From positions 1 to 64,000 of the forward strand of contig NIVC01003203.1 in NCBI GenBank assembly GCA_002269645.1: DNA of 64,000 nt. The letters run 5' to 3'. Made by a program: the position numbers and the translations under genes. The stretch's first letter is position 1. Each line of letters opens with the position of its first letter. The DNA comes from Macrostomum lignano (Eukaryota). Below the pieces are notes generated by a model. It was not told the DNA's origin. It worked only from the letters and a program-made list of their open reading frames with translations, and did no database searches. Shown here one piece after another: positions 984 through 53,292 of this stretch.

Positions 984-1409
984 ATGAAGGCCGAACTGCT
1001 GCTGCTGACTGAGTTCCTGTGTTTCCTGCTTTTATTACCTGGCTCTGAAGCTTATTACTACTATTTCTATAGCTGCTCATACTCCTGCATTGTCGGTGCA
1101 GTTATTGGCTGCCTGACCTTCCTCGGCCTGCTAATCGGGCTCATTGTGTTCCTCTGCTGCTACTGCCAGGCCTCAAAGAAGAGAAGCGTTCAACCAGCTG
1201 GAAACGGCATGGCCTCGATCAGCACGGTGCAGTCAGCCGGTGGCAGCGGCGGGGCATTCTACCCGCAGCAGAACTATCCGCCAGCCTATAACCAGAGCCA
1301 GCAGGCGTACCCGTCGACGGCTGGCTGGAACCCGCCGCCACCTGCTGGTGTGTCGCAGCCGCCTGACACGGCCTACCCGCCGCCGCCGTACCAACCAAAA
1401 CAGGGCTGA
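984..1409 (+). CDS. Small single-pass membrane protein, Shisa-like/CYYR1-like (signal peptide, Tyr-rich ectodomain, TM, Cys cluster, PPxY tail), copy 1
   Basis: Intronless ATG..TGA ORF of 141 aa: hydrophobic leader, AYYYYFYSCSYSC, TM IVGAVIGCLTFLGLLIGLIVFL, LCCYC, tail with YPPAY and YPPPPY; three paralogs nearby. Confidence 0.85.
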   Translation: MKAELLLLTEFLCFLLLLPGSEAYYYYFYSCSYSCIVGAVIGCLTFLGLLIGLIVFLCCYCQASKKRSVQPAGNGMASISTVQSAGGSGGAFYPQQNYPPAYNQSQQAYPSTAGWNPPPPAGVSQPPDTAYPPPPYQPKQG

Positions 1410-3025: not shown

Positions 3026-3619
3026 ATGCCGGAAGTCAAAGATCTACTGCTGGTGCTCCTACTTTGTTTTGTGTTCGTCCTGAAGCCTGCTGATGCAGTA
3101 TACTACTCATACTACTACTACTATAGATACAGTCGCTACTACTACTCCTACTACTACTTTTACAGCTATTTTTACGGCTACAGAACTTCAACAGCCAACC
3201 CGAATGCTATTACAGAAGCAAGTACGTCCAGTAGCGGTTGCAGATCCGGCTGCATCGCCGGAGCGGTGATTGGTGGTCTGGTACTGCTAGGCGTTCTGAT
3301 CGGCATCACCGTCTTGATCTACAGTGTGTGCAAGGCCAACAAAAAGCGGACTGTCCGGCCATCCACCACGGGCACGTCGATGAGCAGTGCCCAGCCGTCG
3401 GCGCCGCCAACCGACAGCGGCGTCTCTTCAATCTCCTATCCAAGTCGACGCCATCAAGTGTTTCCTCAGCAACCGCCAGCCTACGAAGAGAGCCAAATGG
3501 GCCCGCCGGTCTACCCGCCAGGATTCGGCGTGTACCCGCCGCCACCGCCGGGTGTGGCGCAGCCGGACACCGCCTACCCGCCGGAGCCGCCGCCCGCTTA
3601 TCAGCCACGACAGGCCTGA
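3026..3619 (+). CDS. Tyr-rich PPxY membrane protein, copy 2
   Basis: 197-aa intronless ORF, same architecture (GCIAGAVIGG TM start, CK..KRTVRP, PPAY, QPDTAYPP..PPPAY); longest Tyr tract. Confidence 0.85.
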   Translation: MPEVKDLLLVLLLCFVFVLKPADAVYYSYYYYYRYSRYYYSYYYFYSYFYGYRTSTANPNAITEASTSSSGCRSGCIAGAVIGGLVLLGVLIGITVLIYSVCKANKKRTVRPSTTGTSMSSAQPSAPPTDSGVSSISYPSRRHQVFPQQPPAYEESQMGPPVYPPGFGVYPPPPPGVAQPDTAYPPEPPPAYQPRQA

Positions 3620-4085: not shown

Positions 4086-5217
<1,132 letters not shown>

Positions 5218-7624: not shown

Positions 7625-7975
7625 CTTCTTAACTTAATTTATTGCATAACTGTCTTTACAGTGAATATTTGCACGTGACAAATAAACACCACAGAGTGAG
7701 ACTGCATAAGCATAGTCAAAAATATGCAAAATATACACGAAACTATCACGGGTGATGATGGATCAGACGTGACCACAAAACCATTAATAAAGAAAACATT
7801 TTGTACAGACACTATTTTTAACAGAGAACCGGCTGCGGGCGTCTCTTGGGACGGACGTAAAGCAGTAGCACTGTAAACTTGGTCAGTAAAACTAAATTTG
7901 ACAATACTTGTCAGCCTTTTGTCACAGACTTATTTTCTGGACTAAAAAGACACAACTCTCTGTGTCAGCCACTCA

Positions 7976-8463
7976 TCAGGCCTGCTGAGGCTGGTAGGCC
8001 GGCGGCGGAACCGGCGGGTAGGCGGTGTCCGGCTGGGTCGACCCGGGTGCTACCGGCGGGTACATCTGGCTCTCGCTGTAGTTCGGCGGCTTCACCTGCA
8101 GCTGAGCGGGATACTGCTGCTGCTGCGGATTCGTAGGATAGGCGCCGTTGCTGCTGCTGGCAGGTGGCGGGTGGTCATTACCGCGCCCGTAGTGGCCGGT
8201 CTGACGCTTTGCTTTTTGGTCGACTTGCAGAAGCAGCAGTATACAACGAAGAAAGCCACAATGATAACGACGAACGCCAAGATTCCAACAACGACTCCAG
8301 CGATGCAATTCGTCGTTGTGCAGCTTGAACTCCTGTAGCTCCTGTAGAACGAGCTTCTGTAAGAAGAATAATAAAAATTGTAAAGTGCATCAGCACCCTG
8401 CAGCAGAAGCAGAAAGCAGAGCAGATAAGCCGGCAGCAGAGCAGCTCTGATTTCGAAAATCAT
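7976..8463 (-). pseudogene. Tyr-rich PPxY membrane protein, copy 3, with 1-nt frameshift (pseudogene or sequence error)
   Basis: ATG at 8463; N-half in one frame and PPxY tail in another; versus copy 4 (ATGACCATCCCG) this copy reads ATGACCACCCG, missing one base near 8171. Confidence 0.75.
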
Positions 8464-9183
8464 TGTGCTCAGCAAATTAATCGAATATGCGAGTCGTTAC
8501 GGTTGCAGCTTTTAGCGCAGAATCTGTCTAGCGTCGTCACTGTGCGCCTTGGCTGTTATTTTTCTGGACCCGAAACGGCTGCGCCCTGCGCCATTTTAAA
8601 TACTTTGCCCGCCCATGCTGGCCCTGTTGACATTTTTTGGTCTTTTTCGTTCCAACTTGAGACTACCAAGGCTACCTTGCTGTCCACCTTTATTCTGTGT
8701 GCATCTATCTCTCGCCTCTCATTGTGGATAAATAGGTGAACTCGCTGTGCTGTATATACAGCTCCAACCTGGCTCAATTGTCTGCAGCAACTCGGTTTAG
8801 TCTCAATCTGGGCGCAGTACTCAAGTAGAACAACAGTAGAACAGTGCTGGCTTAGATTGTGCAATATGGACAAAAGCCTAAAGTATGCAATGGAAGCGCC
8901 CAAATGGCTTGTTTTTTTCTCCAGAGGCCTGTTTAGGATTCAAAAAACGCATTTGTTGTCTGACAGATTCGCCTCCTTCCAGAGAAATTTCAGGTATTCT
9001 GACCCCATGTTTACTCTCTTTCTCGACGGTAGAGTTTTGTTTGTGGTAATACCCCAAACTTAAAATTTTCAAAAGCGCATCTTTTCAAATTCCAAAATAT
9101 TGCACAAGTACGAGCGAACTGAATGGTTCCTGCACGGCCACGAGTGCGGGAATGACATCTGCACGAGTGAACGTGAAGGAATC

Positions 9184-12089: not shown

Positions 12090-12608
12090 ATGACGTTCGG
12101 AATCAGAGCTGCTCTGCTGCCGGCTTATCTGATCTGCTTTCTGCTTCTACTGCAGGCTGTGGATGCAGTTTACTACACATATTATTATTCTTCATACAGA
12201 TACTCGTACTCGTACTACAGAAGCTACTCGTACAGAAGCTCCTACTCCTACTATTACCTCTCCTGCTCAGTTGGCTGCATCGCTGGAGCCATTGTTGGCG
12301 CCTTGGTGTTCATCGGTGTCGTTGTGACTGTCATCGTTGTAGTCTGCTGTGTCTGCAAGTCTGCCAATAAGCGAAGCGTCAGACCGGCCACTACGGGAGC
12401 GGTCATGACCATCCCGCCACCTGCCAGCAGCAGCAACGGCGCCTATCCTACGAATCCGCAGCAGCAGCAGTATCCCGCTCAGCTGCAGATGAAGCCGCCG
12501 AACTACAGCGAGAGCCAGATGTACCCGCCGGTAGCGCCCGGGTCGACCCAGCCGGACACCGCCTACCCGCCGGGTCCGCCGCCAGCCTATCCGCCCCAGC
12601 ATGCCTGA
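12090..12608 (+). CDS. Tyr-rich PPxY membrane protein, copy 4
   Basis: 172-aa intronless ORF; near-identical tail and about 90 nt of 5' flank shared with copy 3 in inverted orientation. Confidence 0.88.
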   Translation: MTFGIRAALLPAYLICFLLLLQAVDAVYYTYYYSSYRYSYSYYRSYSYRSSYSYYYLSCSVGCIAGAIVGALVFIGVVVTVIVVVCCVCKSANKRSVRPATTGAVMTIPPPASSSNGAYPTNPQQQQYPAQLQMKPPNYSESQMYPPVAPGSTQPDTAYPPGPPPAYPPQHA

Positions 12609-17471: not shown

Positions 17472-20400
17472 TCAGTACATTCTGCCGCCTTTCTCAAAGA
17501 ACATAAAGTCCTGGAATTGAAGTTTGTGTTTAATTATAAATTGCTTCTTTATTTAGTATAAAAATTTTCTTTATAATGACAATCACACCAATCAGCTGAG
17601 CCACCACACCAATCAGCTGAGCCACCACCCCAATCAGTTGAGCCACCACCCCAATCAGCTGGGCCACCACCCCAATCAGTTGAGCCACCACCCCAATCAG
17701 CTGAGCCACCACGCCAATCAGCTGAGCCACCACCCCAATCAGCTGGGCCACCACCCCAATCAGCTGGGCCACCACCCCAATCAGCTGGGCCACCACCCCA
17801 ATCAGCTGGGCCACCACCCCAATCAGCTGGGCCACCACCCCAATCAGCTGAGCCACCACCCCAATCAGCTGGGCCACCACCCCAATCAGCTGAGCCACCA
17901 CCCCAATCAGCTGAGCTGAACTCACAATTAAGAAACAAGCTCCAATGATGGTTGCTTTCACGTTTAAGTGCAAATCAATTGGAAATGTGATGCCAAAATT
18001 GTCGGCATCTGTGAAGTACTCCTGCATCAGGTTGGACCACTGGCGGGAGACTCGGCCCACCTCTTCACCATCGTGCGTGCGGACCTGATAGTTTTATTAT
18101 TTAAAGGCGCCACACATAAAATTATGGATCAACATGGTTTCCAAATGGCTTTTGAGTTTAAGCTCATAGCTCGTACGCCACAAAGCGAAAATTGATAAAC
18201 ACTTATGAGTCTGTACAGACAACCTAAACTACCATTGTCGAAACAAAGCTATAGAGACAAAGACAAAAATGCTCTTGCTGTTTTTGTTGCTGTTCTAAAA
18301 ATAAATGTGTAAAAACTGGATGATCGTCCAACTAAAACTGGTTTTTCGGGTATACAAATGTCTGCTGTCTGTAATTACTGATTGCAGGGTTGGAGGTGTT
18401 GCAGGGTTTGAGGTGTAGCAGGGTTAGGGTGTTGCAGGGTTCGAGTTGTTGCAGGGTTTGAGGTGTTGCAGGGTTTAAGGTGCTGCAGGATTTGAGGTGT
18501 TGCAGGGGTTGAGCTGTTGCAGGGTTTAAGGTGCTGCAGGATTTGAGGTGTTGCAGGGGTTGAGGTGTTGCAGGGTTTGAGGTGTTGCAGGATTTGAGGT
18601 GTTGCAGGGTTTGAGTTGTTGCAGAGTTTGAGGTGCTGCAGGATTTGAGGTGTTGCAGGGTTTGAGCTGTTGCAGGGTTTAAGGTGCTGCAGGATTTGAG
18701 GTGTTGCAGGGGTTGAGCTGTTGCGGGGTTTGAGGTGTTGCATGGTTTGAGGTGTTGCAGGAGTTGAGGTGTTGCGGGGTTTGAGGTGTTGCAGGGTTTG
18801 AGGTGTTGCAGGAGTTGAGCTGTTGCGGGGTTTGAGGTGCTGCAGGATTTGAGGTGTTGCAGGGGTTGAGCTGTTGCGGGGTTTGAGGTGTTGCATGGTT
18901 TGAGGTGTTGCAGGAGTTGAGGTGTTGCATGGTTTGAGGTGTTGCAGGAGTTGAGGTGTTGCAGTTTTGAGCTTTTGCAGGGGTTGAAGTGTTAAATTAA
19001 AAAGCCAGCATAGGAACCCACCGAGAAGGGAATATCGTCGCCCGGACAGTAGCAGTGGCAGTAATTCGGCCCGTCAATGCTGAGCACTTTGTCCCCAGCC
19101 GAGTCCAAAATCTCGTAGGTGGCCTCGCAGCGGCGGTGGATTTGTCTGACCTGGCCGACCAGCTGGCCGGGCGGGGCCTCAACCGTGACCAAGTCTTTGC
19201 AACAGTTGAGGCAGGACAGGCCCTGGTGGAGGCACATGCACCGGTAGGGCCTGGACACGTGGATCACCTCCTCTCCGCTGCTGTCCGTGATGTTCAACTC
19301 AAATGGTCGCGCCGCGCCGCAGCAGTTTCGAGCGACGCTGCTCGATTCTGAGGTGTTGCGAATGGAGGGTATTTGAAATGTCTTGGCTGTGAAAGATGGA
19401 GACAAACACTATCTGACCAATCTGATATGACTGATGACCAACACTAACTGACCAATTTGATATGACTGATGACCAACACTAACTGACCAATTTGATATGA
19501 TTGATGACCAAGACTAGCTTACCAATTTGATATGATTGATGACCAAGACTAGCTGACCAACTTGATAAGATTGATGACCAACACTAACTGACCAATTTGA
19601 TATGACTGATGACCAATACTAACTGACCAATTTAATAAGATTGATGACCAACACTAATGACCAATTTGATTGGATTGATGACCAACACTAACTGACCAAT
19701 TTGATATGACTGATGACCAATACTAACTGACCAATTTAATAAGATTGATGACCAACACTAATGACCAATTTGATTGGATTGATGACCAACACTAACTGAC
19801 CAATTTGATATGACTGATGACCAATACTAACTGACCAATTTAATAAGATTGATGACCAACACTAATGACCAATTTGATTGGATTGATGACCAACACTAAC
19901 TGACCAATTTGATATGACTGATGACCAATACTAACTGACCAATTTAATAAGATTGATGACCAACACTAATGACCAATTTGATCGGATTGATGACCAACAC
20001 TAACTGACCAATTTGATTGGATTGATGACGAACGCCAAAAGCCTAACCTACTATCAGACACACTTGATCCATAAAACCAGTCAGAAGTAACAAACAGCTT
20101 CATTACAAACTAGACTTACTCTCGTTGGCAAAGTAGATCGGCTGACCCATTGTGTTGAGCACAACGTATTGATTAGGCAGGTCCAGGCCAATCAGAACTG
20201 TCGATTTTGTAGCAATAGTTTTATTACTTAATAAATCACAATACTAAAAAAGTGTTTTTTTATCTTAGAAGCTTAAATTTGAGAGATGGCGTTAAGAGGT
20301 GGCTCGCCAATAACACGTCCGACTCTTGCGCAATTCCGTCCGCGTGCACGGAGATTAGCCTAGGGATTATCTTGCGATTCGATGCCCATGAGGGCCAACC

Positions 20401-21261: not shown

Positions 21262-21535
21262 AGAGTTGCTCAGCTTAGCGCTAAGTGCGTCTGACTCTGG
21301 CGTCGCGACCCCTGGTTCGCTTCAGTGCGCGGCCGCATTCATTCTTGTGGCTTGTGCGCTTCATCAATCCAACCCCCAAAGCACCAAGAGTGTACATGCC
21401 TGATGATGAGAAAGTCGGGGCCGATGTACACCCTGTGTGAGCGTGTGTGTGCTCAGTCGGGCCTGACTGCTTGTCTTATTCACTGGCTGCCGCTGACCCT
21501 ACTGCCTTGATTTGTGACAGGGACCAAAGCCTAAC
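21262..21535 (+). mobile_element. SINE-like dispersed repeat, copy B, with tRNA-like head
   Basis: A-box-like TGCTCAGCTTAG and B-box-like GGTTCGCTTC followed by body homologous to copy A. Confidence 0.45.
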
Positions 21536-21824
21536 TACCGAAGCTTTTGTACATCAATAAAAGTGAAAACTTATAAGCTGCGGCAAGAGTGTACACATTG
21601 GCTCATATTTTCACCCCCCCCCTACGGTATATATGTACACTAGAAGCTCAACCCGTCGCGCCCATTGCGTAAAAATTGCCCATCTGTCGGCCAGCTCCCC
21701 ATAGACAGTTTTTTACGAGCATGAAAGCTTGTCATTTCAAATCATCAAATTATTAGCCATTTCTAAAACGCAGTGAAGCAGTTGATTTATGGTTCTCAAT
21801 ACGTACGAGCCGTGCAGTAGAAAA

Positions 21825-22265
21825 ATGGCTTCTTCTAGTAGCAGCAGAAAGAGGCGCTTAGCACCATTCAGCGCCAATTTCGCGCGCCGCCAATCAACAA
21901 AAAGTTGGTCGCCAGATTGCAGCTTCTCCAAGGAGATCTATGCCACTCTGCAAGCCGTGCAGCCGGGCGCCCGCATCTCATGCGAGGCGGTGCGAACGCT
22001 CGACTGTCTGATTGTCGGCGCCTTTGATCTGCTGGCCGAGACCGCTGGCGCCTGGTCTCGTCTGGCCGGCCGGCGCACCCTGACAGACGCCGACCTGGCC
22101 TGGGCGGTGGACCGCCTGCTGCCAGGCGGGTACGCGCATCGAGCTGGTCGGCGCGCTCTAGCGAGGAGTTTTGGCGCTGTCTCCGCTGCCACTGCTTCTG
22201 CCACTGCTCCTGACGCTGCTCCTGCTGCCACTGATTCTGCCACTGCTTCTGCCGATGATACATAA
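21825..22265 (+). CDS. H2B: Highly divergent histone H2B variant
   Basis: SFSKEIYATLQAVQPGARISCEAVRTLDCLIVGAFDLLAETAGAWSRLAGRRTLTDADLAWAVDRLLPG aligns with canonical [69 protein letters not shown]; intronless; alternative in-frame ATG at 21789. Confidence 0.8.
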   Translation: MASSSSSRKRRLAPFSANFARRQSTKSWSPDCSFSKEIYATLQAVQPGARISCEAVRTLDCLIVGAFDLLAETAGAWSRLAGRRTLTDADLAWAVDRLLPGGYAHRAGRRALARSFGAVSAATASATAPDAAPAATDSATASADDT

Positions 22266-23746
22266 CATATACTGCATAGCTTTGCAAATATTTACAATAT
22301 ATATTTTCTGATAATTAGCAAACAGTCAACATCTTTTTTCTCCAGTAGCCATTACAGATGTATAGGTTTCCGAAGAGATATTCAGATAGGCATTTAGACA
22401 AATTAATCATTTGTAAATGTTGAAAAAATAAAATTTTCAATATGCAGAGGATAGTTTTAATTAAATGTTTGTCTATCTGTCACGGAACTAACAAATCCAT
22501 TAATTAAAAGTATAATTGTAATAAAAATTTCTCAAAATTACGCTTGCAAAGTGAGTTTTAATTCGCTACAAAAAAGCATCCTTAAAATAAAAAAGCCAAT
22601 AAAGCACTTCTAAACCCTTAAAACTCCTCGTAAAAGTTTTTAAAGAGGACTTCCCCTGACTAATCAATTATCAAACAGTTAAGAATCATAAAAACAATTA
22701 CATGTAATACCTAATTATTCGTCAATTTTAACAAAAACTAAATTGCGACGCTACAAAATTCTGCACCGCAAAAAATCTAAAGTGTTAAAAGAACAAAGAA
22801 CAAATGTAAAGAATGTTCCAGATATATATTTTAAGATGCTATTTGGTTTTGTTAAGGGGTTACGTTTTGTTTAAATAAAATAATAAAAATATAAACAATA
22901 CATAAATACGTTTTCTATGTCATAGGAAAAGCATCGTAGCGCTCGGATGAACTCTATTTAAAAGTACAGTAGCTAATTCTTAGAGAAATATTTCAGCAAC
23001 CTTATATTAACTTTTAGATATGAGAACAGTTTATTCTCTTTTGAAATTGTATGGCATAATAAAATGAAAAATTAAAACTGAAGTTGTACTCAAGATAATA
23101 AACTGAATAAATTTTGCTTACTGTTTTTTCCGTTGCTCGTATTAGTTATATATATGTCTCTGGTCAGCCAGCCTAACACAGTATAAAGAAGTCTATATTC
23201 TTTAATATGCATTTAAAACAGAAATGGACTAGAAGTATTAAATAAGTCCTTGATTGATTGTCATTATTAACTTTTTGTTATACTTTTTTTGTTTAAGCAG
23301 ATTTCGTCCCTTGAATAATCTGAGAAAAGAACGTTTTCGTGTAAAATATTTAATCGTTTGTTCGCATCCTAAAGACTGGCTCACACCTCCCTCAATTACG
23401 CCATTATGTTCCAGCGCAACGAAAAGTATGTACTTAATGAGCCTTTTAGTATGCTTATTAAACTACATGCTCTGAGCTCTGCCTATGTGATGAGTGATGA
23501 GTCATGGTATTTACTTATTCATTTTTTGTCATAAATTTATGTAACTGTAAACTGCTTTCAATTGCTTCAATAGCCACGACGCCACGAGTAAAAATGAAAG
23601 AGTCCAAAGTCCATAGAATTTCCACAGTCAACTAAGAGCGCACATTTCAACCATCTATTTGTCGAACAGCATTTCCAAAATAGAAGTTCCAAACAGCACA
23701 CAAGCCAGTTCGTAGCTCTAACGGCAACAAAATTCTAGCAACAGTC

Positions 23747-25071
23747 CTAGAACACCATCTCGTGCGGCTTCTGCCCGTTCCTCAAGCTGAACAGGCTTCT
23801 CATGTAGCTGGCCAGCATCTTGGCGTCCGGAGATGCTCGAATAGCCGTCATCACCTGCGAGTCCACCGCCTTCTGGTCCTCGCGCCTCTCGTCAACCAGC
23901 TGATAGGCCGACTGCGGCTTGGCGAACGGATCGGCTGAGCTGGGCTTGGCCCGCTTGGCCTGCAGCTGCTTGGCCCTGCCAGAGAGAGAGACAGTTTCAA
24001 TGCGTGCTAGCTTTGGGGATTTCCTGTTTGTTAGAACCCAGTCTTACCCGATGACTGCGCGTAGTCTTACCCACTGATCTTGTAGTCTAGCCCGAATGAC
24101 CCCGTAGTCTTACCCAATGACCCCGTAGTCTTACCCAATGACCCCGTAGTATTACTCAATGACCCCGTAGTCTTATCCAATTAATGACCCTGTAGTCTTA
24201 TCCAATTAATGACCCCGTAGTCTTTCCCAATGACTCGTAGTCTTACCACAGCCAGCCCAGACAGTATTCTTTCCTGATGAACATGCACTGTCTTCCCTGT
24301 ACATTTAGGTCCGTGGTCCTAACCAGACGTCAATTCAGTTTTCACGGAGAATCCTCAGCCCTCTCTAACTACCAGTGCTACAACAAAAAGCTACTTGACT
24401 ACAACGCGCGCTCGTATTGCTCACCGGCGGAAATAAGCGTCGTTGACTCTCTCCGGCAGGCTGACTCCGCTGATGTCGATTTGCGTCTTCGTAGCGATAA
24501 CGTAGCTCTGAGCAATGCGACGCAGAGGACAGCCGTTGAACTTCAACGGCCCGGTGACCAGCAGGAGGCCGCTGGACAGCTGGCGAAGGAAGACGACCCG
24601 CTTGCCGCGGTGCCGGCCAGCAAGGAGGATCAGCACCGTGCCAGGCGTGATGGAGGCCCTCAGACGCCGCTTGTGATCCTTGAAGCACTTGGTCGGCCGC
24701 GGCGGCGAGTAGCGATGCGGCACGCTGGTTGGCAGACTCCTCGGCGACCGCCGGTCCGGCACCAGACGCTTGCCACCGTTCTTCTCGCCGCCGATGACCT
24801 TCTCCGTCAGCTGCACCTTCGAGGCGGATGCGGCGGTGGCCGATTTTCCGCTGCTGCGGGCCAGCTTCTTCTTCAGCCGGTAGATGGCCTTGCGCTGGAA
24901 CATGCGCGCCCTGCTCAGCTTCATCAGCACGGTGCCGCTCAGGGCCTCGTTGCGGCTGCGTCCTTGCTTCGACGTGCTTGCTGATCCCTTTACTGACGTC
25001 TTTGTTGTAGTCTTTGTAGTTGTCTTTGTTGTAGAGACTGCGCTACCGCTGGCGCTGCCGCCGGCAGCTTG
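23747..25071 (-). CDS. RPL6: 60S ribosomal protein L6 (eL6) coding exons
   Basis: Exons 25071-24425 and 23975-23747 (CG|GTGAGC..CAG|G); motifs [69 protein letters not shown]. Confidence 0.93.
24040..24245. repeat. About 21-bp minisatellite, RPL6 last intron
   Basis: Unit GTAGTCTTACCCAATGACCCC and variants. Confidence 0.8.
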
Positions 25072-25114
25072 CTGAAATGTTTTTTGGGCAGGTTGTGACT
25101 TCCATGCAATTTAA

Positions 25115-26660
25115 TTGCAATGTGGTTTGAGTTGCTTGCAATTTGGTCTGACTCGATTGCAATATGATTTGACTCGATTGCAATTTGGTTTGACTCGATT
25201 GCAATTTGGTTTGACTCGATTGCAATTTGGTTTGACTCGATTGCAATTTGGTATGACTCGCTTGTAATTTGGTTTGACTCGATTGTAATTTGGTTTGACT
25301 TGATTGCAATTTGGTTTGACTCGATTGCAATTTGGTTTGACTCGCTTGTAATTCGGTTTGCTTCGATTGTAATTTGGTTTGACTAGATTGCAATTTGGTT
25401 TGATTCGATTGTAATTTGGTTTGACTCGATTGCAATTTGGTTTGATTCGATTGCAATTTCGTTTGATTCGATTGCAATTCGGTTTGCTTCGATTGTAATT
25501 TGGTTTGACTAGATTGCAATTTGGTTTGATTCGATTGTAATTTGGTTTGATTCGATTGCAATTTGGTTTGATTCGATTGTAATTTGGTTTGATTCAATTG
25601 CAATTTGGTTTGACTCGATTGCAATTTGGTTTGATTCGATTGTAATTTGGTTTGATTCGATTGCAATTTGGTTTGATTCGATTGTAATTTGGTTTGATTC
25701 GATTGCAATTCGGTTTGCTTCGATTGTATTTTGGTTTGACTAGATTGCAATTTGGTTTGATTCGATTGTAATTTGGTTTGCTTCGATTGTAATTTGGTTT
25801 GATTCGATTGCAATTTGGTTTGATTCGATTGTAATTTGGTTTGATTCAATTGCAATTTGGTTTGACTCGATTGCAATTTGGTTTGATTCGATTGTAATTT
25901 GGTTTGATTCGATTGTAATTTGGTTTGATTCGATTGTAATTTCGTTTGATTCGATTGCAATTTGGTTTGCTTCGATTGTAATTTGGTTTGACTAGATTGC
26001 AATTTGGTTTGATTCGATTGTAATTTGGTTTGACTCGATTGCAATTTGGTTTGATTCGATTGCAATTTCGTTTGATTCGATTGCAATTCGGTTTGCTTCG
26101 ATTGTAATTTGGTTTGACTAGATTGCAATTTGGTTTGATTCGATTGTAATTTGGTTTGATTCGATTGCAATTTGGTTTGATTCGATTGTAATTTGGTTTG
26201 ATTCAATTGCAATTTGGTTTGACTCGATTGCAATTTGGTTTGATTCGATTGTAATTTGGTTTGATTCGATTGCAATTTGGTTTGATTCGATTGTAATTTG
26301 GTTTGATTCGATTGCAATTCGGTTTGCTTCGATTGTATTTTGGTTTGACTAGATTGCAATTTGGTTTGATTCGATTGCAATTTGGTTTGCTTCGATTGTA
26401 ATTTGGTTTGATTCGATTGCAATTTGGTTTGATTCGATTGTAATTTGGTTTGATTCAATTGCAATTTCGTTTGATTCGATTGCAATTCGGTTTGCTTCGA
26501 TTGTAATTTGGTTTGACTAGATTGCAATTTGGTTTGATTCGATTGTAATTTGGTTTGATTCGATTGCAATTCGGTTTGACTCGATTGCAATTTGGTTTGA
26601 CTAGATTGCAATTTGGTTTGACTCGATTGCAATTTGGTTTGACTCGATTGCAATTTGGTG
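25115..26660. repeat. 21-bp minisatellite, about 1.55 kb, between EF-hand and RPL6 exons
   Basis: Unit GATTCGATTGCAATTTGGTTT; rare variant GTATTTT recurs at 25726 and 26335 (609 bp = 29 units). Confidence 0.97.
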
Positions 26661-29480: not shown

Positions 29481-32400
29481 TCAGGTCGGAAACATGACCA
29501 GGTCGATGCGGAGATTCCTCTTACGGATGCCGTTGCATCGTTCGGTAACCAAGGCAACCGTGGCAGCGTTGCCGCCGGTGTAATTAGGCGCGCTAAAGAC
29601 GGTGACGCAACGCTTGAGGTAGTGCCACTCGTAGCCGGCCGGCTTGGTCTCGTGGCCGCGGATCAGGCAGGCCAAGTTGAACTGCTGCATGGTCTTCTCG
29701 ATGGCGTCGAAGCCGAACGTGTACGCAATCTGGCGCTCCGAGTTGAAGTGCCAGCCTCGGAGGGACGTCCAGTTGGCGTCGTTCGGGCTCATGTAGGGCA
29801 TGCCGTGGTGCATCGGGTCGGACCAGAGCAGGTCGGACAGCACGAAATCGTAGGCGGAGTGGTTCAGCAGGCTTAGGGAGCGCTGCGTCTCTCGGCTGCT
29901 CGACACGAATCCGGAGGAGCCGACTTGGACCGGCCGGCGCACCTGCGGATCCGGCAGGGTGACGTTGCTGGACTGGGCTGCAGGAACCACTTGAGTTTTG
30001 GACTGGGCTGCAGGAACCACTTGAGTTTTGGACTGGGCTGCAGGGACCACTTGAGTTTTGGACTGGGCTGCAGGGACCACTTGAGTTTTGGACTGGGCTG
30101 CAGGGACCACTTGAGTTTTGGACTGGGCTGCAGGGACCACTTGAGTTTTGGACTGGGCTGCAGGGACCACTTGAGTTTTGGACTGGGCCATGGACCCCAA
30201 GGATTGCTAGACTGAGCTCAAACACCACTGGATTGCTAGACTGAGCTCAAATATCACTGGATTGCTAGACTGAGCTCAAACACCACTGGATTGCTAGACT
30301 GAGCTCAAATATCACTGGATTGCTAGACTGAGCTCAAACACCACTGGATTGCTAGACTGAGCTCAAATATCACTGGATTGCTAGACTGAGCTCAAACACC
30401 ACTGGATTGCTAGACTGAGCTCAAATATCACTGGTTTGCTAGACTGAGCTCAAATATCACTGGTTTGCTAGACTGAGCTCAAATATCACTGGTTTGCTAG
30501 ACTGAGCTCAAATATCACTGGTTTGCTAGACTGAGCTCAAATATCACTGGATTGCTAGACTGAGCTCAAATATCACTGGATTGCTAGACTGAGCTCAAAC
30601 ATCACTGGATTGCTAGACTGAGCTCAAATATCACTGGTTTGCTAGACTGAGCTCAAATATCACTGGATTGCTAGACTGAGCTCAAACATCACTGGATTGC
30701 TAGACTGAGCTCAAACATGGGCTGCATGGATTGCTAGACTGAGCTCAAACATCACTGGTTTGCTAGACTGAACTCAAACATCACTGGATTGCTAGACTGA
30801 GCTCAAACATCACTGGATTGCTAGACTGAGCTCAAACATCACTGGATTGCTAGACTGACCTAGCACTTGGCAGGGGAAATTTTCACCTTCCAGTTGAGAT
30901 AGGAGGTCAGCGCCCCAGGCGCCAGCTGGGCCTTGTGCCGCTGACAGACGGTGCCCAGCGGGCAGCGCTCGCATTGGCGCTGGCAGGTGCGGCAGGCGGA
31001 CAGGGCGGGGCTGAGGCCGCCGTGCAGGCAGAGAATCCGCTGCTCGAGCACGCAGGCCACGGGCAGGTAGTCGAACACGTGGATGAACATGCGCCAAAGC
31101 CCGTGCGCCAGGCGACGGTGGCCCGCGTTGACGGCATTCTCTGCGGTATTCAAGCGGCTTTTTGAATAAGATTCTAAGAAATCATTTTCAGTGTTTCATA
31201 ATTGTACTGTCTAGTGCTGATCTAGGGGATATCTTACGCATAGGTATATACGACTCCTGTAATTAGAAATTTCTTATATTGGAGTAGTATACAATCTTAA
31301 AAAGGATTAAGAGGATCTCTGCTTGGGGATCTGAGATCTTAAAGTGACCTGAGGTTCCTATTCGGGATCTGGGATCTTCTTGTCTGAGATTTCCAATTCG
31401 GGATTTGGGATCTTGCTGGTCTGAGATTTCCCATTCGGGATCTGGGATCTTACTGATCTGAGATTTCCAATTTGGGATCTGGTATCTTACTGATCTGAGA
31501 TTTCCCATTCGGGATCTGGGATCTGGCCTTCCAAAGAACACCCACCGTGGAATCGCTCCTCAATCTCAGCGTAGAACCCGTAGGTCTCGTGCAGTTCAAA
31601 GTCCTCGTGGTTGCCGCGCAGGATGAACACGCGGGAGGGATAGCGCAGCTTGTAGTAGAGGAACAGGCACACCGTCTCCAGCTGCTGCGGCCCCCTGTCC
31701 ACCATGTCGCCTGCGGGCGTCGGCGATGAGAGCGGAGTGAAGAAATCCCACCGCTGCTTCTACGGAATTATCCCACTGACTCTTCTGCTCAATGCCACTG
31801 ACTCTCCTGCTCAATGTCACTGACTCTCCTGCTCAATGTCACTGACTCTCCTGCTCAATGCCACTGACTCTCCTGCTCAATGTCACTGACTCTTCTGCTC
31901 AATGCCACTGACTCTCCTGCTCAATGTCACTGACTCTCCTGCTCAATGTCACTGACTCTCCTGCTCAATGTCACTGACTCTCCTGCTCAATGTCACTGAC
32001 TCTCCTGCTCAATATCACTGACTCTCCTGCTCAATGCCACTGACTCTCCTGCTCAATATCACTGACTCTCCTGCTCAATGCCACTGACTCTCCTGCTCAA
32101 TGTCACTGCCTTTCCTGCTCAATGGCGCTGACTTTCGGGTTCAATCTACGGTAAAACTAGCCAACCCATTGAAAAAGTTAACAAGAATCGCTATAAAGAG
32201 TCACTTCAGGCAGCTCACAAGTGACTCTATCGACTCTTGGGCGATTCTTGTGACTTTTTAACAACTTTAACGACTGAAATGCAACGGAAACAACAGTTAA
32301 GTCACGAGCGCATCACGCTCGAAAAATCTTCCAAGAGCTAGAGTCGTTTTATGCAACGCCCCAGAGTCGTAGACGATAAAAATGCTTCAAATAGACTTTT

Positions 32401-36625: not shown

Positions 36626-45174
<8,549 letters not shown>

Positions 45175-46584: not shown

Positions 46585-47043
46585 ATGGCATCAGTTCAGC
46601 CGCAGCCAGACCAGTTAGACAGATTTCGCACCTTTCTACGCAATGAGCTGCTAGCCGATTTGGAGGCCTGGCTGAGCAGGCGGAACCAGCTTGACAGAGA
46701 CATTGAGCAATTGCAAGCACTGCACCAGACTGTAGCCACACTGGAGTCTGAGTGCAGCCAGCATGGCTTCATCAATGTTCTCGGCGATCTTGGCTGCGAA
46801 TTTTTCGTCCAAGCTCGCGTCGCTGTTGGAACTAAACAGTCAGATTTTAAGCGCTGCTTGTGCGTTAATATTGGTATGGATGTGCATCTGGAGATGAGCT
46901 TGGATGAGGCTGCAGAGTTTGCCAGTGCCCGCCTGGCCAGTGTGGAGGCTGAGCGAGAGGCAGCCTGCAGTAAGATTGGCCAGATACAGGCCTATGCGGC
47001 TCTGTTCGCCTATGGCCTGTCTGCTCTGCCTTGCAATGATTAA
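46585..47043 (+). CDS. UXT: UXT / prefoldin alpha-like subunit
   Basis: 152-aa intronless ORF; N-terminal helix FLRNELLADL, DLGCEFFVQA, VNIGMDVHLEMSLDEAAEF, C-terminal helix. Confidence 0.82.
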   Translation: MASVQPQPDQLDRFRTFLRNELLADLEAWLSRRNQLDRDIEQLQALHQTVATLESECSQHGFINVLGDLGCEFFVQARVAVGTKQSDFKRCLCVNIGMDVHLEMSLDEAAEFASARLASVEAEREAACSKIGQIQAYAALFAYGLSALPCND

Positions 47044-47702: not shown

Positions 47703-49702
47703 GCTGCAGATAACGACAGCAGCAGCGGCGGTGGCGGCGTCAGTCACAGCTGGAGCGAGCTGCTGACGCCAGGTGAACAGTCCGCCCTGTCAGCCTGTCT
47801 GGCCCGCAGCGGCTGTCAGTGCTTGGCCAGCGCCGTGGCCCGGCTGTACCGCGGCCAGGAGACGCCGCCGCCAAGCCGCTGGGTGCCGCTGGCCACCGGC
47901 GTCGTCTGCTTTGTCCGCCGCCCCGGCCATCGATTCGCCGTGCAGTTCTACGACATGGACAACATCCGGCAGGAGCCGGCGCTAGACCAGGACCTCTATC
48001 CGGGCATGCAGTACCACAGCGCCTACGACTTCTTTCATCACTTCGAGGCGGCTAATTGTGTTGTCGGTTTTTGTTTTGCCGACTGCGACACCGGCTTGGA
48101 CGAGGGGGCTAGGCTGGGCCAGTGCGTCAAGCTGCAGGCACTGAAGATGGGCCCGGCTAGGCAAGTAGCTGAGCCAGCTCTGGCCCCAGCCTCGCGGCCT
48201 ATTCGCAGCGGCGGTGGCGGCAGCGGGTTTGGTCGGCGGCTGTCTTTGAGGAGGTCGAAGTCGAGTGTGAATGCGGATAGCAAGTTGGTGAGAGCAGATT
48301 TTTACTGCGATAACTGCTTGGTTTAGTGTCTGGAGCTCGCGCTGTTGATTGCCTTCCATAAGAATCGCCCCACCCTCCATAAGAATCGCCCCCACCCTCC
48401 ATAAGAATCGCCCCTACCCTCCATAAGAATCGCCCCCGCCCTCCATAAGAATCGCCCCCACCCTCCATAAGAATCGCCCCCACCCTCCATAAGAATCGCC
48501 CCTACCCTCCATAAGAATCGCCCCACCCTCCATAAGAATCACCCCACCCTCCATAAGAATCGCCCTACCCTCCATAAGAATCGCCCCACCCTCCATAAGA
48601 ATCGCCCCACCCTCCATAAAAATCGCCCCTCCATAAGAATCGCCCCACCCTCCATAAGAATCGCCCCCGCCCTCCATAAGAATCGCCCCCGCCCTCCATA
48701 AGAATCGCCCCCACCCTCCATAAGAATCGCCCCCGCCCTCCATAAGAATCGCCCCCACCCTTCATAAGAATCTCCCCACCCTCCATAAGAATCGCCCCCA
48801 TCCTCCATAAGAATCGCCCCCACCCTCCATAAGAATCTCCCCACCCTCCATAAGAATCGCCCCCACCCTCCATAAGAATCGCCCCCACCCTCCATAAGAA
48901 TCGCCCCCACCCTCCATAAGAATCGCCCCCGCCCTCCATAAGAATCGCCCCCGCCCTCCATAAGAATCGCCCCCACCCTCCATAATAATCGCCCTCCGCC
49001 GTTCCCAGCGCCACCATCGGCCAACCTCTGAGGCCACCAGCGCAGCGCCGGCACCGCTGCAGTCCTCTGCAGCCGCTCCGTCAACCGCCACCCCGACGAC
49101 AGCGTCGGCAGCGCCCCATTCAGCCGTCCACCATCCGCAGCACCGTCGCCTCACGCGCGGCCGCCTCCGCCGTCAAGACATCGGCGCTCCGCAGAACTTT
49201 CGCCACGTGCAGCACGCCGGAGTCGACACCCTGGCCGACAACGCGGCCAGAATCGACCAGTTCGACTGGCAGTCGGACCCGGTGCTGCGCCAGCTGTTTG
49301 GCAGCCTGGACGCCGACCTGCAAGCGAAGGTGGCGGCCAGTCCGACCGGGCCGCAGGCTCTGAACAAATTCGCTGACAGACACGGCGGCATTCAGAATCT
49401 GATGGAGCTGGCTAAATCACAGGGCTATACTGCTGGCGTGGAGACTGATGCGTCAAAGGTACAGTTCAATGTCAAATCACTTTTGTTTTGTGGAATGTGG
49501 GTCATGTGTATCTTCTCGTTTAAAAAGCAGATGGCTACGTTAGTCAGTTAGTTGATTAGTTAGTTATTTGGTTAGTTAGTTGATTAGTTAGTTAGTTATT
49601 TGGTTAGTTAGTTAGTTAGTTAGTCAGTTAGTTAGTCAGTTAGTTAGTTAGTCAGTTAGTTAGTTAGTTAGTCAGTTAGTTGATTAGTTAGTTAGTTATT
49701 TG

Positions 49703-49740
<38 letters not shown>

Positions 49741-49997
49741 CATTTAGTTGATTAGTTAGTTAGTTATTTGGTTAGTTAGTTGATTAGTTAGTTAGTTATT
49801 TGGTTAGTTAGTTGATTAGTTAGTTAGTTAGTTAGTCAGTTAGTTAGTTAGTCAGTTAGTTGGTTAGTTAGTTAGTTAGTTAGTCAGTTAGTTAGTCAGT
49901 TAGTTAGTTAGTTAGTTAGTCAGTTAGTTAGTCAATTATTTATTTGGTTAGTTAGTTAGTTAGTTAGTCATTTAGTTGATTAGTTAGTTAGTCAGTG

Positions 49998-50028
<31 letters not shown>

Positions 50029-50058
50029 CAGTTAGTTGATTAGTTAGTTAGTTATTTG

Positions 50059-50100
<42 letters not shown>

Positions 50101-50189
50101 CATTTAGTTGATTAGTTAGTTAGTCAGTGAGTTAGTTAGTTAGTTGGTTAGTTCGTTAATTAATTAGTTAGTTAGTCAGTTAGTTAGTC

Positions 50190-50220
<31 letters not shown>

Positions 50221-50285
50221 CAGTTAGTTAGTCAATTATTTATTTGGTTAGTTAGTTAGTTAGTTAGTTAGTCAGTGAGTTAGTC

Positions 50286-50320
<35 letters not shown>

Positions 50321-50346
50321 CAGTTAGTTAGTCAATTAGTTATTTG

Positions 50347-50380
<34 letters not shown>

Positions 50381-50385
50381 CAGTG

Positions 50386-50424
<39 letters not shown>

Positions 50425-50605
50425 CAGTTAGTTGATTAGTTAGTTAGTCAGTGAGTTAGTTAGTTAGTTGGTTAGTTCGTTAATTAATTAGTTAGTTAGT
50501 CAGTTAGTTAGTCAGTTAGTTAGTTAGTTAGTTAGTTAGTCAGTTAGTTAGTCAATTATTTATTTGGTTAGTTAGTTAGTTAGTTAGTTAGTCAGTGAGT
50601 TAGTC

Positions 50606-50636
<31 letters not shown>

Positions 50637-50662
50637 CAGTTAGTTAGTCAATTAGTTATTTG

Positions 50663-50696
<34 letters not shown>

Positions 50697-50701
50697 CAGT
50701 G

Positions 50702-50732
<31 letters not shown>

Positions 50733-50762
50733 CAGTTAGTTGATTAGTTAGTTAGTTATTTG

Positions 50763-50800
<38 letters not shown>

Positions 50801-51057
50801 CATTTAGTTGATTAGTTAGTTAGTTATTTGGTTAGTTAGTTGATTAGTTAGTTAGTTATTTGGTTAGTTAGTTGATTAGTTAGTTAGTTAGTTAGTCAGT
50901 TAGTTAGTTAGTCAGTTAGTTGGTTAGTTAGTTAGTTAGTTAGTCAGTTAGTTAGTCAGTTAGTTAGTTAGTTAGTTAGTCAGTTAGTTAGTCAATTATT
51001 TATTTGGTTAGTTAGTTAGTTAGTTAGTCATTTAGTTGATTAGTTAGTTAGTCAGTG

Positions 51058-51088
<31 letters not shown>

Positions 51089-51118
51089 CAGTTAGTTGAT
51101 TAGTTAGTTAGTTATTTG

Positions 51119-51156
<38 letters not shown>

Positions 51157-51337
51157 CATTTAGTTGATTAGTTAGTTAGTCAGTGAGTTAGTTAGTTAGT
51201 TGGTTAGTTCGTTAATTAATTAGTTAGTTAGTCAGTTAGTTAGTCAGTTAGTTAGTTAGTTAGTTAGTTAGTCAGTTAGTTAGTCAATTATTTATTTGGT
51301 TAGTTAGTTAGTTAGTTAGTTAGTCAGTGAGTTAGTC

Positions 51338-51372
<35 letters not shown>

Positions 51373-51398
51373 CAGTTAGTTAGTCAATTAGTTATTTG

Positions 51399-51432
<34 letters not shown>

Positions 51433-51437
51433 CAGTG

Positions 51438-51468
<31 letters not shown>

Positions 51469-51497
51469 CAGTTAGTTGATTAGTTAGTTAGTCAGTG

Positions 51498-51540
<43 letters not shown>

Positions 51541-51954
51541 CAGTTAGTTAGTCAGTTAGTTAGTTAGTCAGTTAGTTGGTTAGTTAGTTAGTTAGTTAGT
51601 CAGTTAGTTAGTCAGTTAGTTAGTTAGTTAGTTAGTCAGTTAGTTAGTCAATTATTTATTTGGTTAGTTAGTTAGTTAGTTAGTCATTTAGTTGATTAGT
51701 TAGTTAGTCAGTGAGTTAGTTAGTTAGTCAGTTAGTTGATTAGTTAGTTAGTTATTTGGTTAGTTAGTTGATTAGTTAGTTAGTTATTTGGTTAGTTAGT
51801 TGATTAGTTAGTTAGTTAGTTAGTCAGTTAGTTAGTTAGTCAGTTAGTTGGTTAGTTAGTTAGTTAGTTAGTCAGTTAGTTAGTCAGTTAGTTGATTAGT
51901 TAGTTAGTTAGTTAGTCAGTTAGTTAGTCAGTTAGTTAGTTAGTTAGTTAGTTG

Positions 51955-51989
<35 letters not shown>

Positions 51990-52114
51990 GATTAGTTAGT
52001 TAGTTATTTGGTTAGTTAGTTAGTCAGTTAGTTAGTCAGTTAGTTAGTCAGTTAGTTAGTCAGTTAGTTATTTGGTTAGTTAGTTAGTCAGTTAGTTAGT
52101 CAGTTAGTTATTTG

Positions 52115-52155
<41 letters not shown>

Positions 52156-52341: not shown

Positions 52342-52376
<35 letters not shown>

Positions 52377-52437: not shown

Positions 52438-52480
<43 letters not shown>

Positions 52481-53257: not shown

Positions 53258-53292
<35 letters not shown>

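What the first reader, a model, noticed from the sequence alone, without database searches (positions are those of the whole stretch)
21789..22265. Orphan, extremely divergent H2B variant lacking the ubiquitylated C-terminal lysine
Seen: a solitary intronless H2B fold outside any histone cluster. Lys is widely replaced by Arg/Ala, two Trp and two Cys lie in the fold, the alphaC helix reads AHRAGRRALARSF (no K120 equivalent), and an Ala/Thr/Asp C-terminal extension follows. No histone stem-loop is visible after the stop. Established: canonical H2B is nearly invariant, and divergent Arg-rich variants are typically germline or sperm specific. Inference: a lineage-specific chromatin variant forming unstable or non-ubiquitylatable nucleosomes.
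Basis: partly seen in the sequence, partly recalled or inferred. Interest (0 to 1): 0.7.

Follow-up and report, generated by a model that had tools for sequence, protein, structure and literature searches.

The report
Orphan divergent H2B-like gene, flatworm
A flatworm (Macrostomum lignano) genome segment carries a solitary, single-exon gene for a very divergent copy of histone H2B that keeps the histone fold but has lost almost all lysines and other canonical surface residues; it is real and unusual, but whether and where it acts in chromatin is untested.

Summary
The ORF at 21789-22265 (+) is real: 158 aa, single exon. The window is Macrostomum lignano contig NIVC01003203.1, and a second syntenic copy (BOX15_Mlig020207g1) lies on another contig. 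Sequence (phmmer vs PDB) and a predicted structure (Foldseek top 50) match only histone H2B. Identity to canonical H2B is about 30% over 76 ungapped residues. The hydrophobic core is kept (14/33 identical) and the charged surface is rewritten (1/20). There is no Lys after residue 48, and the acidic-patch E105/E113, E76 and R33 equivalents are lost. The Ala/Thr/Ser/Asp C-tail is encoded by a 12-nt tandem repeat. The window holds no histone 3' stem-loop and no other histone gene, and AATAAA lies 162 nt after the stop. No closer relative exists among 1.8 to 5.8 billion database proteins. Neutral decay is unlikely: an intact ORF arose in 3% of simulations and the core-biased pattern in 0.2%. The fold also uses native codons, and it lies in the longest stretch identical between the two copies. 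Best reading: a lineage-restricted, replication-independent-type H2B variant making labile, modification-poor dimers or nucleosomes. Germline specificity, nucleosome incorporation and selection among species remain untested. The protein is less basic than H2B, so it is not protamine-like.

The parts
21628..21634 (+). TATA-like element about 155 nt upstream of the first ATG, in the roughly 1-kb divergent intergenic region shared with the scramblase gene on the minus strand
   Evidence: Regex hit TATATA. Consensus match only; function not shown. Differences between the two copies cluster around it (21614-21762).
21789..22265 (+). Complete CDS of the H2B-like protein (158 aa plus TAA). An in-frame TGA lies two codons upstream of the first ATG (21783-21785). 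A second in-frame ATG (M13) lies at 21825.
   Evidence: Annotated as a single-exon 158-aa gene in GCA_002269645.1. The paralogue is PAA65883.1, BOX15_Mlig020207g1.
21789..21917 (+). N-terminal tail, residues 1-43. It is Ser-rich with RKRR and RR motifs. The basic KKRKRSRK segment of canonical H2B is largely lost (R33 to P, K34 to D). All four differences between the two genomic copies lie here.
   Evidence: pLDDT below 50 for residues 1-33. GC3 0.51.
21918..22142 (+). Histone fold, residues 44-118: alpha1 21927-21959, alpha2 21981-22064, alpha3 22086-22118. It aligns without gaps to human H2B residues 35-109.
   Evidence: AF2 pLDDT about 90. Foldseek top 50 all H2B. 23 of 76 identical over residues 44-119, with hydrophobic 14/33 against charged 1/20 identical. 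GC3 0.76 and preferred codons like neighbouring exons.
22143..22202 (+). Predicted alphaC-like helix, residues 119-138 (AGRRALARSFGAVSAATASA). It contains no Lys. The acidic-patch E113 and the K116, K120 and K125 equivalents are absent.
   Evidence: Helix 119-138 at pLDDT about 57-64. Sequence. The exact register with canonical alphaC is ambiguous.
22175..22253 (+). Tandem repeat (12-nt unit CTGCCACTGCTT, or a 39-nt unit x2) that encodes most of the acidic Ala/Thr/Ser/Asp C-terminal extension (residues 126-158, pI 4.05)
   Evidence: TRF. GC3 of only 0.30, unlike the fold. pLDDT below 50 for residues 140-158.
22427..22432 (+). First AATAAA after the stop (162 nt downstream), conserved in position in the second copy. 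No histone 3' stem-loop is present.
21914..22506 (+). Longest stretch identical between the two genomic copies in a 4.1-kb comparison (594 nt between flanking differences). It covers the fold, the tail and the proximal 3' UTR.
   Evidence: 67 difference events in 4.1 kb (0.016 per nt). P(no event in 352 coding nt) is about 0.003. The next longest run is 296 nt.

Best explanation
This is a protein-coding, lineage-restricted paralogue of histone H2B in Macrostomum lignano, with the gene anatomy of a replication-independent variant: solitary, no 3' stem-loop, a poly(A) signal, and its own promoter region.

Shown: the H2B hydrophobic core, the L1 (P-x-x-x-I-S) and L2 (R-x-T-L-T) loop motifs and the LLPG junction to alphaC are kept.

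Inferred: the protein still folds and pairs head-to-tail with an H2A-type partner. Almost every canonical surface function has been stripped. There are no lysines in the fold or alphaC, so no K120 ubiquitylation and no acetylation or methylation sites. Acidic-patch E105 became G and E113 became R. E76, which bridges to H4, became T. The basic N-tail segment that passes between the DNA gyres is largely gone. Net charge is about +6 against +18 for canonical H2B. A recently repeat-born acidic, disordered tail has been added.

The most likely mechanism (inferred, not shown) is that it replaces H2B in a subset of chromatin. The resulting dimers or nucleosomes would bind DNA and H3-H4 weakly, would lack the acidic-patch docking site, and would be invisible to lysine-directed modification. 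This is comparable to primate H2B.W1 but more extreme. The tissue of action is unknown; germline is a reasonable guess by analogy only.
For: H2B homology. phmmer against PDB returns only H2B. An exhaustive phmmer search of 1.84 billion representatives returns H2B proteins from plants, animals and protists at 28-40% identity, apart from three hits (P0002, P0003, P0021) that match only the low-complexity C-terminal part. The AF2 fold and Foldseek top 50 are all H2B. No other histone-fold Pfam family appears at E<=10.

Selection for the fold. Identity is 42% at hydrophobic positions and 5% at charged positions (Fisher p=0.004). In a substitution-only neutral-decay simulation to the same divergence, 3% of runs stayed stop-free and 0.2% reproduced the pattern.

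Native coding character. Fold GC3 is 0.76 with GCC, CGC, CTG and GGC preferred, as in neighbouring exons.

Both homeologous copies keep the intact ORF with no indel, although the tail is a tandem repeat. The fold, tail and proximal 3' UTR form the longest identical run between the copies.

Gene anatomy. No stem-loop. A conserved AATAAA. No other histone in 64 kb.

Expression. The Mlig_3_7 gene models were derived from RNA-seq-based transcript assembly, not ab initio prediction (PMC5730564), so the existence of the model implies transcription.

The species has a normal H2B. Published primers encode MPPKVSGK... and ...TKYTSAK.

Precedent. H2B.W1 has 43% identity, E105Q and no K120 equivalent, yet still forms a relaxed nucleosome (PMC11514470).
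Against: No orthologue was found in any other species: 5.8 billion protein clusters, 1.84 billion representatives and JGI metagenomes. Long-term constraint therefore cannot be measured.

The two copies differ by 2 synonymous and 2 non-synonymous changes, which is uninformative. The identical run could reflect gene conversion rather than selection.

The Pfam Histone score of 17.5 bits is below the gathering threshold of 26.4.

No transcript-derived contig encodes the protein in the collections searched. No expression table mentioning Mlig020207 could be retrieved.

So many nucleosomal contact residues are lost that incorporation into a nucleosome is uncertain. alphaC is predicted at low confidence.
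Confidence: 0.45

Rival explanations
1. It is a non-functional or nearly neutral relic. An H2B paralogue was functional for a long time, which would explain the kept core, but it is now under relaxed constraint. It would be a transcribed ORF drifting in composition and picking up a minisatellite in its 3' end.
For: No relatives appear anywhere. Nearly all functionally annotated surface residues are lost. The C-tail is a repeat expansion with foreign codon usage, in a genome full of minisatellites. Two of the four differences between copies are non-synonymous. Pfam scores below threshold.
Against: The ORF is intact in both copies with no indel, even in the repeat. The fold region is the most conserved segment between the copies. 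Fold codon usage is native. The core-biased conservation pattern is improbable under neutral decay. The annotation is transcript-based.
Confidence: 0.25
2. It is a functional H2B-derived histone-fold protein that no longer works in nucleosomes. It would be a co-opted dimerisation module, like mammalian H2B.L (subH2B) in the perinuclear theca, or as suspected for H2B.N. It might act with a divergent partner or as a chaperone or decoy for H2A.
For: It has lost R33/K34, K57, K85, E76, E105, E113 and all alphaC lysines. The fold pI is only 8.7 and the tail is acidic. Raman et al. raise non-nucleosomal roles for very divergent H2B variants (PMC8857922).
Against: DNA-contacting L1 and L2 motifs are kept: S64 (S55), R95 (R86), T97 (T88), Y51 (Y42) and S45 (S36). 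H2B.W1 shows that a very divergent H2B can still form nucleosomes. There is no positive evidence for any other partner.
Confidence: 0.2
3. It belongs to a different histone-fold family (TAF12, NF-YB/C, CENP-T/W/S/X, NC2, Dpb3/4) rather than to H2B.
For: Only the general point that histone folds are shared and sequence identity to H2B is low (about 30%).
Against: Pfam lists only PF00125 at E<=10, and no TAF or CBFD_NFYB_HMF hit. The 60 listed PDB sequence hits are H2B or H2B fusions, apart from one chain whose depositors' name is H4. The 50 best structural hits are all H2B. The H2B-specific LLPG motif plus a following helix is present.
Confidence: 0.03
4. It is a chance ORF in GC-rich, repeat-rich DNA with spurious similarity to H2B.
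For: The opposite strand also carries ORFs of 139 and 101 aa in this GC-rich stretch, so ORF length alone means little.
Against: The ungapped 76-residue alignment score is 9 SD above shuffles. There are independent sequence and fold matches to H2B only. The frame-specific GC3 is elevated.
Confidence: 0.01

Closest known systems
Primate/eutherian testis H2B.W1 (H2BFWT) and H2B.M (H2BFM)
   Same: Both are very divergent H2Bs that keep the fold. Both lack a K120 equivalent and have the acidic-patch E105 neutralised and weakened N-tail and DNA contacts. These are the best single-copy PDB sequence hits (32.2 and 30.4 bits against 26-29 for canonical) and have the highest identity among structural hits (32-33%). 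H2B.W1 forms relaxed nucleosomes (PMC11514470).
   Different: They are not orthologous: those are eutherian inventions and this is a flatworm gene. This one is more extreme, at about 30% against 43% identity. It has no lysine at all in the fold, has also lost E113 and E76, and carries a short N-tail and an acidic repeat tail instead of a long N-terminal extension. Its expression site is unknown.
Mammalian H2B.N and H2B.L (subH2B) (Raman et al. 2022, PMC8857922)
   Same: Both are lineage-restricted, fast-evolving H2B paralogues with poly(A) signals rather than stem-loops. Both have lost acidic-patch function and may act outside nucleosomes.
   Different: H2B.N is truncated and lacks alphaC, whereas this protein is predicted to keep an alphaC-like helix and extends beyond it. 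There is no sequence relationship beyond the shared H2B fold.
Canonical replication-coupled H2B (including M. lignano's own, MPPKVSGK...TKYTSAK)
   Same: The same fold in an ungapped register over 76 residues, conserved P50, I54-S55, R86, T88 and LLPG, and an intronless CDS.
   Different: Canonical H2B has about 20 Lys, a strongly basic N-tail, E76, E105, E113 and K120, a 3' stem-loop and a clustered gene arrangement. All of these are absent here.
Sperm-specific H2B variants of invertebrates and plants (sea-urchin sperm H2B, Hydractinia H2B.3-6, Arabidopsis H2B.8); from my own knowledge, not tested here
   Same: H2B paralogues with added low-complexity tails that are used in germ cells.
   Different: Those gain basic SPKK-type or IDR tails that compact DNA. 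This one loses positive charge and gains an acidic tail, which argues against a compaction role.

Membership tests
Histone H2B (homology) | Histone fold: alpha1-L1-alpha2-L2-alpha3 | tested here: met
   AF2 helices 47-57, 65-92 and 100-110 at pLDDT about 90. Foldseek target TM about 0.73 to H2B chains.
Histone H2B (homology) | Best similarity to H2B rather than to H2A, H3, H4 or non-histone histone-fold families | tested here: met
   PDB phmmer hits are H2B. All named hits in the exhaustive search are H2B. The top 50 structural hits are H2B.
Histone H2B (homology) | H2B-specific C-terminal alphaC helix after the LLPG junction | tested here: inconclusive
   LLPG is present and a helix 119-138 is predicted, but at pLDDT about 60 and with an ambiguous register.
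Histone H2B (homology) | Pfam PF00125 score above the curated gathering threshold (an operational criterion, not a biological one) | tested here: not met
   17.5 bits against a cut-off of 26.4, E=0.005. Homology rests on the other tests.
Functional nucleosomal H2B | Conserved DNA-contact residues (human numbering R33, S36, Y42, S55/S56, K57, K85, R86, S87, T88) | tested here: inconclusive
   Kept: S36, Y42, S55, R86, T88. Lost: R33 to P (L in the second copy), S56 to C, K57 to E, K85 to G. S87 became R. The list of contact residues is from established nucleosome structures.
Functional nucleosomal H2B | Acidic-patch residues E105 and E113, and the H4-bridging E76 | tested here: not met
   E105 to G and E76 to T in the ungapped register. 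E113 falls on R in the ungapped register, and no acidic residue lies in 114-140.
Functional nucleosomal H2B | Ubiquitylatable lysine at the K120 position | tested here: not met
   No lysine anywhere after residue 48.
Functional nucleosomal H2B | Dimerises with H2A and is incorporated into nucleosomes | not testable with these tools
   This needs complex prediction with an M. lignano H2A, or reconstitution.
Replication-independent histone variant gene | Located outside histone clusters, lacking the 3' stem-loop, with a polyadenylation signal | tested here: met
   No other histone in 64 kb. No RF00032 match. AATAAA 162 nt after the stop, conserved in the second copy.
Germline/testis-specific histone variant | Expression restricted to testis, ovary or germ cells | not testable with these tools
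   No paper or stored supplement mentions Mlig020207. The relevant tables were truncated when stored.
Processed pseudogene / decaying retrocopy | Disabling mutations and a neutral substitution pattern | tested here: not met
   The ORF is intact in both copies. Conservation is core-biased, and the pattern arises in 0.2% of neutral simulations. Intronlessness is non-diagnostic because histone genes are intronless.

The most novel reading that the evidence does not exclude
A lysine-free, acidic-patch-less H2B variant with an acidic disordered tail could be a genuine chromatin component of the Macrostomum germline. It would mark or loosen chromatin in a way that is immune to ubiquitin-, acetyl- and methyl-lysine signalling and to acidic-patch readers. 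Possible roles are easing histone eviction during spermiogenesis or marking paternal chromatin. That would be an independent, more extreme invention of the H2B.W-type solution outside mammals, in an animal where transgenesis and RNAi make it directly testable.
Probability: 0.2. Interest if true: 0.6.

Novelty: new variant of a known kind. Interest (0 to 1): 0.4.

Why it matters
H2B variants are the rarest class of histone variants in animals, and the well-studied ones are mammalian germline inventions. A flatworm H2B paralogue that keeps the fold but has no lysine in it is a natural 'modification-null' H2B. It has also lost both H2B acidic-patch residues and carries far less positive charge. 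If it is expressed and chromatin-bound, it would show convergent evolution of destabilising H2B variants outside vertebrates. It would also offer a tractable model, since M. lignano has RNAi and transgenesis, for asking what H2B lysines and the acidic patch are needed for in vivo. If it proves to be a drifting relic, it is only an annotated hypothetical protein of no wider consequence.

Tried and rejected
(1) Orthologues or paralogues. I searched 5.8 billion protein clusters with the full protein and with the fold only at E<=10. I also ran an exhaustive phmmer search of 1.84 billion representatives and a JGI metagenome scan. The only close hit was the second M. lignano copy. The best other hit, P0009 (40% identity), is itself 56% identical to canonical H2B, so it is not a family mate.

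(2) Expression. A full-text search for Mlig020207 found nothing. Supplement searches in five M. lignano papers found nothing, and the big tables were truncated when stored. Exact-protein look-ups found only the genome assembly and no transcript contigs.

(3) dN/dS between the two copies. There are only 4 differences (2 synonymous, 2 non-synonymous), which is uninformative.

(4) tblastn of human H2B against the window does not detect this ORF even at E<=10. BLAST-level searches would therefore miss it. The same search remains a valid negative for canonical histones.

(5) Literature on flatworm sperm nuclear basic proteins or H2B variants yielded nothing relevant.

(6) The hits P0002 and P0003 (1700-aa repeat proteins, E about 1e-9) match only residues 115-156 and are repeat or low-complexity matches, not homologues.

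It was repeated with database hits only.

Full report
**Identity of the window**

The exact 158-aa product of the ORF is encoded on NIVC01003203.1 of the Macrostomum lignano Mlig_3_7 assembly (GCA_002269645.1). Its record coordinates equal the window coordinates. A second copy, PAA65883.1 'hypothetical protein BOX15_Mlig020207g1' (UniRef: 'Histone H2A/H2B/H3 domain-containing protein'), lies on NIVC01001608.1. It has the same neighbours: an Ig-domain gene, a scramblase on the opposite strand, a 374-aa repeat-containing gene and a Metallophos gene. The DV1 line is known to carry duplicated chromosomes, and its assembly holds 180 Mb of blocks at 95% identity or more (PMC5730564). The two copies are therefore homeologues or uncollapsed duplicates.

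**The observation**

The ORF 21789..22265 (+) is present and runs from an ATG two codons after an in-frame TGA (which lies at 21783-21785) to a TAA. Its composition is as described:
- 4 Lys (all at or before residue 48), 16 Arg and 33 Ala.
- W89, W105, C65 and C73 inside the fold.
- AHRAGRRALARSF at residues 116-128.
- A following Ala/Thr/Ser/Asp tail.

Rfam finds no histone stem-loop in the window at gathering thresholds, nor at E<=10 in 21500-23500. A loose stem-loop regex also finds none. tblastn with human core and linker histones finds no other histone in the 64 kb.

Two corrections apply. First, the five canonical fold lysines (K43, K46, K57, K85, K108) became A, Q, E, G and H, not Arg. 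Second, the protein is less basic than H2B, with pI 9.55 against 10.3 and a fold pI of 8.7.

**Is it H2B?**

- Pfam gives only PF00125 (Histone) at E=0.005 and 17.5 bits. This is below the 26.4-bit gathering cut-off, and no other histone-fold family appears at E<=10.
- phmmer against all PDB sequences returns H2B chains. H2B.M and H2B.W score 30-32 bits and canonical H2B scores 26-29 bits.
- An exhaustive phmmer search of 1.84 billion representative proteins gives 26 hits at E<=1e-3. One is the second M. lignano copy and three (P0002, P0003, P0021) are repeat or low-complexity matches. The rest are H2B proteins of plants, a nematode, a mollusc, a bird, an isopod and unnamed environmental eukaryotes, at 28-40% identity.
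- AlphaFold2 with a 20-sequence alignment predicts the three histone-fold helices at pLDDT about 90, a fourth C-terminal helix at about 60, and disordered tails.
- The 50 best Foldseek matches in the PDB are all H2B chains, with target TM about 0.73.

The ORF is therefore an H2B homologue, not a TAF12-, NF-Y- or CENP-type protein.

**How divergent is it, and in what pattern?**

Residues 44-119 align without gaps to human H2B residues 35-110. Of 76 positions, 23 are identical, and the BLOSUM62 score is 85 against -67.5 +/- 16.5 for shuffles. Identity is 14/33 at hydrophobic positions, 8/23 at polar positions and 1/20 at charged positions (Fisher p=0.004).

Kept residues:
- P50, I54-S55, R86, T88, Y42 and S36.
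- The LLPG junction and the core of alpha2.

Lost residues:
- R33/K34, now P/D.
- K57, now E.
- K85, now G.
- E76, now T. This is the residue that contacts H4 and is mutated in the E76K oncohistone.
- E105, now G, and E113, now R. These are the two H2B acidic-patch residues.
- Every alphaC lysine.

In pairwise comparison the protein is 31-40% identical to every other H2B. Even the most divergent of its database hits are mostly 55-65% identical to canonical H2B. It is a long, isolated branch.

**Gene or relic?**

- A crude substitution-only simulation of neutral decay, starting from a canonical H2B coding sequence and running to the same divergence, left 3% of sequences stop-free. It reproduced the core-versus-charged pattern in 0.2% of runs. 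Most of the divergence therefore happened under selection for a folded protein.
- The fold-coding part has GC3 of 0.76 and the same preferred codons as neighbouring bona fide exons, whose GC3 is 0.57-0.85. The C-tail has GC3 of 0.30 and is encoded by a 12-nt/39-nt tandem repeat at 22175-22253. The tail therefore looks like a recent minisatellite-born addition in a genome full of such arrays.
- Between the two copies, the CDS has 4 substitutions, all within the first 125 nt (2 synonymous; L3V and P42L), and no indel. The flanks differ by 0.9-2.3% and carry 10 indels in 2.9 kb.
- The longest identical run in a 4.1-kb comparison (594 nt, 21914-22506) covers the fold, the tail and the proximal 3' UTR, including the first AATAAA. 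This fits constraint on the mRNA, but gene conversion would look the same.
- The Mlig_3_7 gene set was built from RNA-seq-guided transcript assembly with experimentally defined ends (PMC5730564). The gene model therefore implies transcription. I could not retrieve any level or tissue information.

**Mechanism**

Shown:
- The H2B fold and its core are kept.
- There are no lysines in the fold or alphaC.
- The acidic-patch, E76 and HBR-type basic residues are lost.
- An acidic disordered tail has been added.
- The gene has replication-independent-type anatomy.

Inferred:
- The protein heterodimerises with an H2A-type partner.
- If deposited, it gives nucleosomes with weaker dimer-DNA and dimer-tetramer contacts, no acidic-patch docking on the H2B side, and no substrate for H2B ubiquitylation or acetylation.

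The closest functional precedent is primate H2B.W1. It has 43% identity, E105Q and no K120 equivalent, makes fewer dimer-DNA contacts, and forms a relaxed nucleosome (PMC11514470). Very divergent mammalian H2B.N and H2B.L are suspected or known to act outside nucleosomes (PMC8857922), and that remains a live rival here. The much reduced net positive charge argues against a protamine-like DNA-compacting role. The species has a normal H2B: published primers encode MPPKVSGK... and ...TKYTSAK.

**Verdict**

The gene is already in GenBank as a hypothetical protein with an automatic histone-domain label, but nothing has been published on it. I rate it as a new variant of a known kind with moderate interest. 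Its value depends on expression and comparative data that exist publicly but could not be reached with these tools.

Noticed in passing
window 984-1409 (+), 3026-3619 (+), 8092-8475 (-), 12090-12608 (+): This is a local family of four small ORFs of 127-197 aa. Each has a signal-like N-terminus, a Tyr/Ser-rich stretch (YYSYYYYYRYSRYY...), one hydrophobic segment and a Pro-rich C-terminus with PPxY-like motifs. Two of them were tested against Pfam and gave no match. One copy at L001 286-931 is 85% identical to the copy on the opposite strand at window 7975-8586.
   Followed up: partly
whole window, e.g. 4089-5216 (GACA)n, 49539-54401 (GTTA)n, 25114-26659, 36756-38059, 39380-40687, 55002-56521: The window has an extreme density of micro- and minisatellites. 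TRF reports 34 rows (overlapping periods included) with score of at least 400, including a 4.9-kb (GTTA)n block. Most have periods of 15-50 nt. Array lengths differ between the two homeologous copies. This fits the 15% simple and tandem repeat content reported for the genome.
   Followed up: partly
window 29481-30200 (-) and 25043-26653 (-): Minisatellites lie in frame with coding ORFs. A 30-nt repeat encoding [10 protein letters not shown] x7 sits directly upstream of, and in frame with, a PPP-type phosphatase exon (Metallophos). A 21-nt repeat (TKLQSNQ, about 73 copies) forms a 536-aa ORF on the same strand as, and upstream of, a ribosomal protein L6e exon at 24424-24930. Whether these repeats are exonic or intronic was not resolved.
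   Followed up: no
window 21614-21762: Ten of the differences between the two copies cluster in the 150 nt just upstream of the H2B-like ATG, around the TATA-like element. This contrasts with zero differences in the following 594 nt from 21914. The cause could be promoter divergence between homeologues or simply an indel-prone AT-rich stretch.
   Followed up: no
window 21868-22287 (-) and 21938-22243 (-): Antisense ORFs of 139 and 101 aa overlap the H2B-like CDS. They are most likely a by-product of the GC-rich, stop-poor composition and the GCN repeat. They were not tested further.
   Followed up: no
P0002 / P0003 (database proteins, about 1700-1800 aa): The sequence read (P0002) is Myb-domain-like and carries about 17 copies of a repeat HKKARKALAHSWGAATSTPHARTV. 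P0002 and P0003 match residues 115-156 and 115-144 of the H2B-like protein (alphaC plus tail) at E about 1e-9 to 1e-10. I treated this as a repeat-inflated low-complexity match. The resemblance to an H2B alphaC-like 'ARKAL..S.G' motif is unexplained.
   Followed up: no
window 38999-39358 (-), 41361-41960 (-), 46585-47043 (+), 47823-48326 (+), 18992-19405 (-): Ordinary neighbours were identified by Pfam: protein kinase exons, a prefoldin-subunit ORF, a WH1-domain exon and a scramblase exon. None is chromatin-related, which confirms that the H2B-like gene sits among unrelated genes.
   Followed up: yes
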